Under the pieces are notes generated by a model that was given only the letters and a program-made list of their open reading frames with translations, did no database searches and was not told where the DNA came from. The position numbers and the translations under genes were made by a program. A stretch of DNA of 64,000 nt from Euprymna scolopes (lineage: Eukaryota), in the NCBI GenBank assembly GCA_053919585.1, contig CM132785.1; one strand, given 5' to 3'. Shown here piece by piece: positions 34,112 through 36,050 of this stretch (position 1 is the first letter of the stretch; every line of letters begins with the position of its first letter).

Positions 34112-35728
34112 CTAATGCTTTTAATAATACGAGGGACCTTGCAAAACTAATGCTTTTAATAATACGAGGGATCTTGCAAAACTAATGCTTTTAATAATAC
34201 GAGGGATCTTGCAAAACTAATGCTTTTAATAATACGAGGGATCTTGCAAAACTAATGCTTTTAATAATACGAGGGATCTTGCAAAACTAATACTTTTAAT
34301 AATACGAGGGATCTTGCAAAACTAATGCTTTTAATAATACGAGGGATCTTGCAAAACTAATGCTTTTAATAATACGAGGGATCTTGCAAAACTAATGCTT
34401 TTAATAATACGAGGGATCTTGCAAAACTAATGCTTTTAATAATACGAGGGATCTTGCAAAACTAATGCTTTTAATAATACGAGGGACCATGCAAAACTAA
34501 TGCTTTTAATAATACGAGGGATCTTGCAAAACTAATGCTTTTAATAATACGAGGGATCTTGCAAAACTAATGCTTTTAATAATACGAGGGATCTTGCAAA
34601 ACTAATGCTTTTAATAATACGAGGGATCTTGCAAAACTAATGCTTTTAATAATACGAGGGATCTTGCAAAACTAATGCTTTTAATAATACGAGGGATCTT
34701 GCAAAACTAATGCTTTTAATAATACGAGGGACCTTGCAAAACTAATGCTTTTAATAATACGAGGGACCATGCAAAACTAATGCTTTTAATAATACGAGGG
34801 ATCTTGCAAAACTAATGCTTTTAATAATACGAGGGATCTTGCAAAACTAATGCTTTTAATAATACGAGGGATCTTGCAAAACTAATGCTTTTAATAATAC
34901 GAGGGATCTTGCAAAACTAATGCTTTTAATAATACGAGGGATCTTGCAAAACTAATGCTTTTAATAATACGAGGGATCTTGCAAAACTAATGCTTTTAAT
35001 AATACGAGGGATCTTGCAAAACTAATGCTTTTAATAATACGAGGGACCATGCAAAACTAATGCTTTTAATAATACGAGGGATCTTGCAAAACTAATGCTT
35101 TTAATAATACGAGGGATCTTGCAAAACTAATGCTTTTAATAATACGAGGGATCTTGCAAAACTAATGCTTTTAATAATACGAGGGATCTTGCAAAACTAA
35201 TGCTTTTAATAATACGAGGGATCTTGCAAAACTAATGCTTTTAATAATACGAGGGACCTTGCAAAACTAATGCTTTTAATAATACGAGGGACCATGCGAA
35301 ACTAATGCTTTTAATAATACGAGGGATCTTGCAAAACTAATGATTTTAATAATACGAGGGATCTTGCAAAACTAATGCTTTTAATAATACGAGGGACCTT
35401 GCAAAACTAATGCTTTTAATAATACGAGGGATCTTGCAAAACTAATGCTTTTAATAATACGAGGGACCTTGCAAAACTAATGCTTTTAATAATACGAGGA
35501 ATCTTGCAAATCTAATGCTTTTAATAATACGAGGGATCTTGCAAAACTAATGCTTTTAATAATACGAGGGATCTTGCAAAACTAATGCTTTTAATAATAC
35601 GAGGGATCTTGCAAAACTAATGCTTTTAATAATACGAGGGACCATGCAAAACTAATGCTTTTAATAATACGAGGGATCTTGCAAATCTAATGCTTTTAAT
35701 AATACGAGGGATCTTGCAAAACTAATGC
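34112..35728. repeat. 35-bp minisatellite, 46 copies, derived from a mariner TIR/flank junction
   Basis: Unit CTAATGCTTTTAATAATACGAGGGATCTTGCAAAA; 1610 bp / 35 = 46 units plus a final CTAATGC. The last unit runs into CTCTTATTTTTT of the mariner MITE. Confidence 0.97.
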
Positions 35729-36050
35729 CTCTTATTTTTTAGTACACCCGAATAGGTTAGAGAGGATTGAAAATTGTATTGTTATGATGACTGAACTTTG
35801 TGAGCTGGAAGTTTAATCTCTGTTGCAGATATTGACAGTGTGAGGCTCTACTAAAGCAACCACTGTCGACGGCGTGCATCAGTAGCCTTATTGAATTTCT
35901 GGCAAAATTGCGTTAAGACTGGCAGTGATTGTTTTGAGAAAATAAGTCATGAAGCACAAAAAGCAACGCTCCTTTTTATGGTACTACTCTCGTCTTTGTA
36001 GCTCTACATTTTAAAATAAAGAAATGTTTTATTTCAGAACTATGCACGTA
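35703..36050 (+). mobile_element. Mariner-derived MITE (~345 bp)
   Basis: Left TIR TA-CGAGGGATCTTGCAAAACTAATGCCTCTTATTTTTT. The internal TGTTGCAGATATTGAC..GAATTTCTGGCAAAATTGC..GAGAAAATAA is homologous to 61725-62053 and 52718-53268. The right end is degenerate (...CACGTA). Confidence 0.75.

What the first reader, a model, noticed from the sequence alone, without database searches (positions are those of the whole stretch)
34112..36050. Birth of a 1.6-kb minisatellite from a mariner terminal inverted repeat via a 7-bp microhomology
Seen: the 35-bp unit is flank TTTTAATAA plus TA plus TIR start CGAGGGATCTTGCAAAA, bounded by CTAATGC. That 7-mer occurs both in the host flank (34112-34118) and inside the TIR (…AAAACTAATGCCTC). 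After 46 units the sequence continues into the MITE body, whose relatives at 52.7 and 61.7 kb have the same TA-CGAG..AAAGTAATGCCTC end. Inference: slippage or unequal exchange between the two CTAATGC seeds amplified the element end. The result is an array of 46 partial transposon ends, each with its TA, that might bind or titrate transposase or nucleate silencing.
Basis: partly seen in the sequence, partly recalled or inferred. Interest (0 to 1): 0.7.

Follow-up and report, generated by a model that had tools for sequence, protein, structure and literature searches.

The report
Minisatellite born at transposon-host junction
In a very large animal genome, the first 24 bases of a long-dead mariner-type jumping-gene remnant plus 11 bases of the neighbouring DNA have been copied head to tail 46 times; this is a clean but ordinary example of how two short identical words can seed a tandem repeat.

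Summary
Window 34112-35728 is exactly 46 units of 35 bp plus 7 bp, with no indels and 32 identical units. The unit occurs nowhere else in the 5.9-Gb genome.

Each unit is 11 bp of single-copy host flank (including the TA target duplication) plus the outer 24 bp of the left terminal inverted repeat (TIR) of a 344-bp MITE at 35705-36048. The MITE family is abundant (at least 3456 candidates). It derives from a mariner: a longer subfamily keeps a Pfam HTH_48 remnant.

The array overruns a whole number of units by exactly the 7-mer CTAATGC, which lies once in the flank and once in the TIR. This is the signature of the established Haber-Louis and Taylor-Breden model of minisatellite birth. The element is old (20.8% from the family majority) and the array is young (1.3% variant bases). 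All units share the copy's private TIR substitutions, so amplification happened on a dead element.

Nothing supports transposase titration or silencing, and no intact cognate transposase was seen. Read-level confirmation failed for tool reasons. This scan has already noted several transposon-born minisatellites on other DNA of this genome.

Verdict: real, well explained, a new member of a known kind, of low to moderate interest.

The parts
34112..35728 (+). 35-bp minisatellite, 46 units plus a 7-bp overhang
   Evidence: TRF; unit table; unit unique to this locus in the genome
34112..34118 (+). CTAATGC seed in single-copy host flank (left copy of the 7-bp direct repeat)
   Evidence: Sequence; flank is single-copy; sharp left edge
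34119..34129 (+). Host flank TTTTAATAA plus TA target-site duplication, first instance; not element sequence
   Evidence: In 29 family copies similarity begins only after the TA and the flanks are unrelated
35703..35704 (+). Left TA target-site duplication attached to the element proper
35705..36048 (+). 344-bp mariner-derived MITE (internal-deletion derivative), 20.8% diverged from the family majority
   Evidence: Genome search; alignment; divergence; mariner ancestry
35705..35740 (+). Left terminal inverted repeat (about 36 bp in the family); its outer 24 bp are the element part of every unit
   Evidence: Family termini compared; unit part matches 19 of 24
35722..35728 (+). CTAATGC seed inside the TIR (right copy of the direct repeat, TIR positions 18-24); the C at position 18 is not among the common states there in 29 sampled copies
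36013..36048 (-). Right terminal inverted repeat, heavily decayed in this copy
   Evidence: (comparison of termini)
36049..36050 (+). Right TA target-site duplication
61728..62051 (+). Another copy of the short MITE family, TA on both sides, no array
52710..53270 (-). Copy of the 550-bp subfamily that keeps the transposase HTH remnant, no array (ends approximate)

Best explanation
An old mariner-derived MITE inserted at a TA in single-copy DNA and then decayed. By chance the host flank carried CTAATGC 11 bp upstream of the insertion, and the decayed TIR carried the same 7-mer at positions 18-24. Misalignment between these two words, by replication slippage or unequal sister-chromatid exchange, duplicated the 35 bp between them: 11 bp of flank including the TA, plus 24 bp of TIR. 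Once two copies existed, further slippage and unequal exchange, partly in blocks of about eight units, grew the array to 46 copies. The array is a neutral by-product with no demonstrated function. Shown here: the anatomy, the uniqueness of the unit, the element boundaries, the mariner ancestry and the relative ages. Inferred: the misalignment event itself and the mode of growth.
For: The array is exactly 46x35+7 bp with sharp edges. Without microhomology a 7-base overhang has probability about 1.3e-4. Element homology starts at TA|CGAGGG in 29 copies with unrelated flanks. The left flank is single-copy. The unit is found only here: 46 forward hits, 0 reverse, 0 in the control. The unit's TIR part matches the family TIR at 19 of 24 positions, and all 46 units share the same 5 differences. 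The element is 20.8% from the family majority, while the array has 1.3% variant bases and only 4 singleton substitutions. D-type variant units sit at units 11, 19, 27, 34 and 44, more evenly spaced than chance (P=0.013). The unit has no hairpin. The model is established, and 7 bp is the modal flanking direct repeat of human TE-derived tandem repeats (PMC3389668).
Against: No pre-expansion or empty allele was seen, so the presence of CTAATGC in the flank before the expansion is inferred. No read-level check of copy number was possible. Concerted evolution inside an array can make it look younger than it is and can spread late substitutions, so the timing argument is not strict. Seeds of 7 bp or more are expected at about 12.6% of insertions, and one sampled copy has an 8-bp seed without an array. 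The seed therefore does not explain why this locus expanded.
Confidence: 0.8

Rival explanations
1. The first duplication arose in another way, and a later deletion trimmed the left edge of the array. The 7-bp overhang would then be an accident of where that deletion ended.
For: Array edges are unstable in general. Any phase would be possible after such a deletion. No pre-expansion allele is available to exclude it.
Against: It needs an extra event. Only about 1 in 35 phases gives this overhang, and the overhang equals the modal length of flanking direct repeats reported for TE-derived tandem repeats. The left edge is clean.
Confidence: 0.07
2. The first duplication was made during mariner activity, by faulty repair of a transposase-induced break at the element end or by aberrant one-ended transposition, rather than by replication slippage on a dead element.
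For: The unit starts precisely at the TA and element end, where the transposase cuts. The genome holds many mariners with intact open frames.
Against: All units carry the copy's 5 differences from the family TIR, and the array is far more uniform than the element is old. The intact mariners have unrelated ends. No long open frame of the MITE's own lineage appears among the 150 best matches. The unit's other boundary lies inside the TIR at the 7-mer, not at a cleavage site.
Confidence: 0.05
3. The array, or its copy number, is an assembly artefact.
For: No spanning reads could be examined, and no long-read runs were listed.
Against: There are no indels in 46 units, and there are structured substitution variants with non-random spacing. 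Two low-depth runs from a 2019 study of the same species label hold 54% and 28% of the sampled words of a stretch that is half array. That fits multi-copy array words, though I could not see which words they hold.
Confidence: 0.05
4. The array is functional: 46 partial transposon ends act as a sink for a mariner transposase or nucleate small-RNA or heterochromatin silencing.
For: Each unit keeps the TA and the outer 24 bp of the TIR. The genome contains active-looking mariners.
Against: Those mariners have different ends. No intact transposase of the cognate lineage was seen. The unit lacks the inner third of the TIR and has 5 of 24 bases changed. It is a single locus in 5.9 Gb. Comparable young arrays without transposon ends lie in the same window. 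No expression or chromatin data exist.
Confidence: 0.03

Closest known systems
Minisatellite birth between short direct repeats (Haber and Louis 1998; Taylor and Breden 2000), as described in PMC3389668
   Same: The array is bounded by a 7-bp direct repeat: a whole number of units plus the repeat. The first step is misalignment between noncontiguous short repeats, followed by expansion.
   Different: Nothing in the mechanism differs. The only peculiarity is that one seed lies in host DNA and the other in a transposon end.
TE-derived tandem repeats of the human genome, including Alu-derived minisatellites flanked by short direct repeats (PMC3389668, which cites Jurka and Gentles)
   Same: A piece of a dead transposable element is amplified in place. 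Flanking direct repeats are most often 7 bp.
   Different: Those units lie within the element. Here the unit straddles the element-host junction, so it also carries the target-site TA and 9 bp of flank. The element is a DNA transposon MITE, not a SINE.
Satellites linked to Tc1/mariner MITEs or foldback ends: Xenopus miDNA4 (reviewed in PMC12628747) and Drosophila virilis Tetris (PMC4079207)
   Same: Tandem repeats associated with the terminal regions of DNA transposons.
   Different: In those cases the repeats are part of the mobile element and are dispersed with it. Here the unit includes host DNA, is found at one locus only and cannot have travelled with the element.
Earlier notes of this scan on the same genome, for example s1-288500 (Tc1-like TIR grown into 55 x 22 bp) and s1-268945, s1-263284, s1-288522
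   Same: Locus-specific young minisatellites grown in place from dead transposons in this genome.
   Different: Those units are internal to the element. This one spans the insertion junction and shows its seed words explicitly. I did not re-examine those loci.

Membership tests
Minisatellite (locus-specific tandem repeat) | Head-to-tail units of about 10-100 bp forming an array of about 0.5-30 kb | tested here: met
   35 bp x 46.2 = 1617 bp, 97% matches
Minisatellite (locus-specific tandem repeat) | Variable copy number between individuals (VNTR behaviour) | not testable with these tools
Dispersed satellite DNA family | The same unit in arrays at several loci | tested here: not met
   All 46 matches with up to 3 mismatches lie at this locus; none elsewhere in 5.9 Gb
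Haber-Louis / Taylor-Breden type origin | Array flanked by a 5-10-bp direct repeat, i.e. a whole number of units plus the repeat | tested here: met
   46x35+7 bp; CTAATGC at 34112-34118 and 35722-35728; chance about 1.3e-4
Haber-Louis / Taylor-Breden type origin | A progenitor allele with the two repeats around a single unit | not testable with these tools
   The left flank is single-copy, so there is no paralogous site; no reads could be laid
MITE | Short non-coding element with terminal inverted repeats, a target-site duplication and high copy number | tested here: met
   344 bp, TIRs of about 36 bp, TA on both sides, at least 3456 candidates
mariner family of Tc1/mariner | TA target-site duplication and TIRs of about 30 bp | tested here: met
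mariner family of Tc1/mariner | Transposase with the Mos1-type N-terminal HTH | tested here: met
   Remnant in the 550-bp subfamily: PF17906 at 31.6 and 31.4 bits against a cut-off of 24.1. tblastn to an intact mariner ORF of this genome gives E=1.7e-5, with the same region aligning in a dozen or more copies. The C-terminal end reads WQKCIENGGDYVE followed by a stop.
mariner family of Tc1/mariner | DD34D catalytic domain in the autonomous partner | tested here: inconclusive
   The catalytic region is deleted in both subfamilies. 22 transposase loci examined have other ends. The 150 best HTH-remnant matches have open frames of 135 aa or less. This is a small sample of many thousands of candidates.
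Transposase decoy or silencing nucleator | A cognate active transposase, or small RNAs or chromatin marks on the array | not testable with these tools
   No RNA or chromatin data; no intact cognate transposase seen

The most novel reading that the evidence does not exclude
The 46 tandem partial mariner ends, each with its TA, act as a decoy that binds a resident mariner transposase, or as a seed for small-RNA or heterochromatin silencing of the MITE family.
Probability: 0.03. Interest if true: 0.6.

Novelty: new member of a known kind. Interest (0 to 1): 0.22.

Why it matters
The locus is a very legible example of how a minisatellite is born. The unit straddles a transposon-host junction, so both seed words, the target-site TA and the order of events (insertion, decay, duplication, growth) can be read directly from one sequence. 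It adds one more case to a genome that seems prone to growing short arrays out of dead transposons. If the array varies between individuals it could serve as a marker. It does not open a new question or reveal a new kind of element.

Tried and rejected
1. Read support. Those places were not sent to any search tool afterwards.

2. Autonomous parent. The twelve best PF01359 loci and ten copies with long open frames have ends unrelated to the MITE. A probe from the longer window copy found only a 550-bp non-autonomous subfamily. A protein search with the HTH remnant gave no open frame above 135 aa.

3. Other TIR-derived arrays. A strict two-core pattern found a 34-bp array on another chromosome. 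On reading, it has no MITE end and is unrelated. The same pattern found only a two-copy 31-bp duplication in one other copy.

4. Paralogous empty site. The left flank is single-copy, so there is none.

5. Hairpin-driven slippage. The unit does not fold.

6. A-type followed by D-type units as a marker of block duplication is not significant (P=0.085).

Full report
OBSERVATION

Tandem Repeats Finder reports one array at 34112-35728 with period 35, 46.2 copies, 97% matches, no indels and score 3087.
- Cutting the stretch into 35-bp units gives 46 whole units plus 7 bases, 1617 bp in all.
- 32 units are identical, and only 21 of 1610 bases differ from the majority unit.
- The 35 bases upstream match the unit at 6 of 35 positions. 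Downstream, only the first 7 bases continue the period.

THE ELEMENT

- The sequence after the array belongs to an abundant family. A whole-genome search with 35703-36060 gave at least 3456 first-look candidates, and the 40 scored were 72-76% identical.
- I aligned 29 of these with 50 bases of flank. Similarity begins right after a TA at CGAGGG and ends before another TA. The flanks are unrelated to one another.
- The copy here is therefore 35705-36048 (344 bp), with TA at 35703-35704 and at 36049-36050.
- The two family termini are inverted repeats of about 36 bases.
- The 24 element bases in the unit match the family majority at 19 of 24 positions. The whole copy differs from the majority at 70 of 337 positions, or 20.8%.

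MARINER ANCESTRY

- The short MITE keeps too little coding sequence to test. The copy at 52.7-53.3 kb in the window is longer.
- Its extra part retrieves a 550-bp subfamily with at least 4661 candidates. These have the MITE 5' part, about 200 extra bases and the MITE 3' part.
- tblastn with an intact 339-aa mariner open frame from this genome aligns its residues 10-75 to that extra part in a dozen or more copies (best E=1.7e-5). It aligns its last residues to a WQKCIENGGDYVE-stop remnant present in both subfamilies.
- Pfam gives HTH_48, the HTH domain of Mos1 transposase, at 31.6 and 31.4 bits against a cut-off of 24.1.
- With the TA duplication and the TIRs, the family is a mariner internal-deletion derivative. 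The catalytic domain is absent, so DD34D could not be checked.
- I did not find a full-length parent. The genome holds about 50,000 first-look matches to PF01359, and many have open frames of about 340 aa. The 22 loci I examined have unrelated ends.
- The 150 best matches to this lineage's HTH remnant have open frames of at most 135 aa.

THE NON-ELEMENT PART OF THE UNIT IS HOST DNA

- The 531 bases ending at 34130 are single-copy, apart from three short partial matches further upstream.
- The 35-bp unit, searched with up to 3 mismatches, occurs 46 times at this locus and nowhere else in 5.9 Gb. There were no hits on the other strand or in the control.
- It is therefore not a dispersed satellite and not a component carried by the element.

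HOW IT AROSE

- A tandem duplication made by misalignment between two short direct repeats leaves a whole number of units plus one copy of the repeat. That is the pattern here: CTAATGC sits at 34112-34118, next to unique flank, and at 35722-35728, which is TIR positions 18-24.
- Without microhomology, period identity running 7 bases past the last unit has probability about 1.3e-4.
- The seed itself is not remarkable. Random flanks of this composition share a word of 7 bases or more with this element end in 12.6% of trials. One sampled copy (L022) has an 8-base seed and no array. The seed permits the event but does not explain why this locus expanded.
- The mechanism is the established model of Haber and Louis and of Taylor and Breden. 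In the human genome about 300 TE-derived tandem repeats are flanked by direct repeats of 5-20 bp, most often 7 bp (PMC3389668). A recent review lists microhomology-mediated and unequal-exchange routes from transposons to satellites (PMC12628747).

TIMING AND GROWTH

- All 46 units, and the copy attached to the element body, share the same five differences from the family TIR.
- One of these is the C at position 18, which lengthens the seed from 6 to 7 bases. That C is not among the common states at this position in the 29 sampled copies, where G is the majority.
- The array has 1.3% variant bases and four singleton substitutions. The element is 20.8% from its family majority, and its right TIR is badly decayed.
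- The simplest reading is that amplification took place long after insertion, on a dead element. Homogenisation within arrays weakens this as a strict clock.
- Units carrying the double variant lie at positions 11, 19, 27, 34 and 44. This is more even than chance (P=0.013), which suggests growth partly in blocks of about eight units.
- Non-consensus units are denser in the half nearer the element, 9 against 5.
- The unit has no stable fold: -2.6 kcal/mol, z=+1.4.

FUNCTION

- I found nothing to support transposase titration or nucleation of silencing.
- The unit holds only the outer two thirds of a mutated TIR.
- No intact cognate transposase was seen, and the resident intact mariners have other ends.
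- The array is a single locus.
- The same 64-kb window holds two other young minisatellites without transposon ends: 46 bp x 7 at 12492-12815 and 29 bp x 33 at 54023-54965.
- Earlier notes of this scan record many transposon-born minisatellites elsewhere in this genome, which they call a large mollusc genome. I did not check those claims or the organism.

WHAT COULD NOT BE DONE

- No long-read runs were listed.
- Two low-depth runs from a 2019 study with the same species label hold 54% and 28% of the sampled words of a stretch that is half array. That would fit multi-copy array words, but I could not see which words they hold.
- Copy number, polymorphism and the pre-expansion allele remain unverified.

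VERDICT

The birth model is well supported but not proven. The functional idea is unsupported. This is a new member of a known kind. Its only distinctive point is that the unit spans the transposon-host junction, which makes the history unusually easy to read.

Noticed in passing
window 36054-38136: Three bases after the MITE's right TA begins another, younger and very abundant repeat: at least 11,055 candidates at 83-85% identity. It has inverted arms at 36146-36272 and 38031-38136 and an internal (AT)27. It is probably a TIR-bounded element of about 2.1 kb.
   Followed up: partly
window 12492-12815: A perfect 46-bp x 7.0 minisatellite, 100% identical units, with a 2-base overhang.
   Followed up: no
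window 54023-54965: A purine-rich 29-bp x 32.7 minisatellite whose variant units occur in successive blocks along the array. It produces the only long ORFs in that area, which are artefacts of the repeat.
   Followed up: no
L053-L062 (for example L053:1293-2312): A young mariner lineage with many apparently intact open frames of about 339-347 aa (starting MRKEDLRLLF, ending RWQKCMAVQGSYFD). Its ends are unrelated to this MITE.
   Followed up: partly
window 52710-53270; L064-L082: A 550-bp non-autonomous mariner subfamily with at least 4661 candidates. It retains an HTH_48 remnant between the MITE 5' and 3' parts.
   Followed up: yes
L087:259-740 (G000:C21:56586408-56586889): An unrelated 34-bp x 14.2 minisatellite (98% matches) that shares a 12-mer with the MITE TIR but has no MITE end beside it.
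   Followed up: yes
G000:C45:45348919-45348961: Another MITE copy with a two-copy 31-bp tandem duplication inside its TIR region. It could be an arrested first step of the same process.
   Followed up: no
L006, L007, L023, L024, L030 (right flanks): Five MITE copies share similar sequence beyond their right TA (TATGACAAAGC...). This suggests insertions into one repeat family, or a composite element.
   Followed up: no
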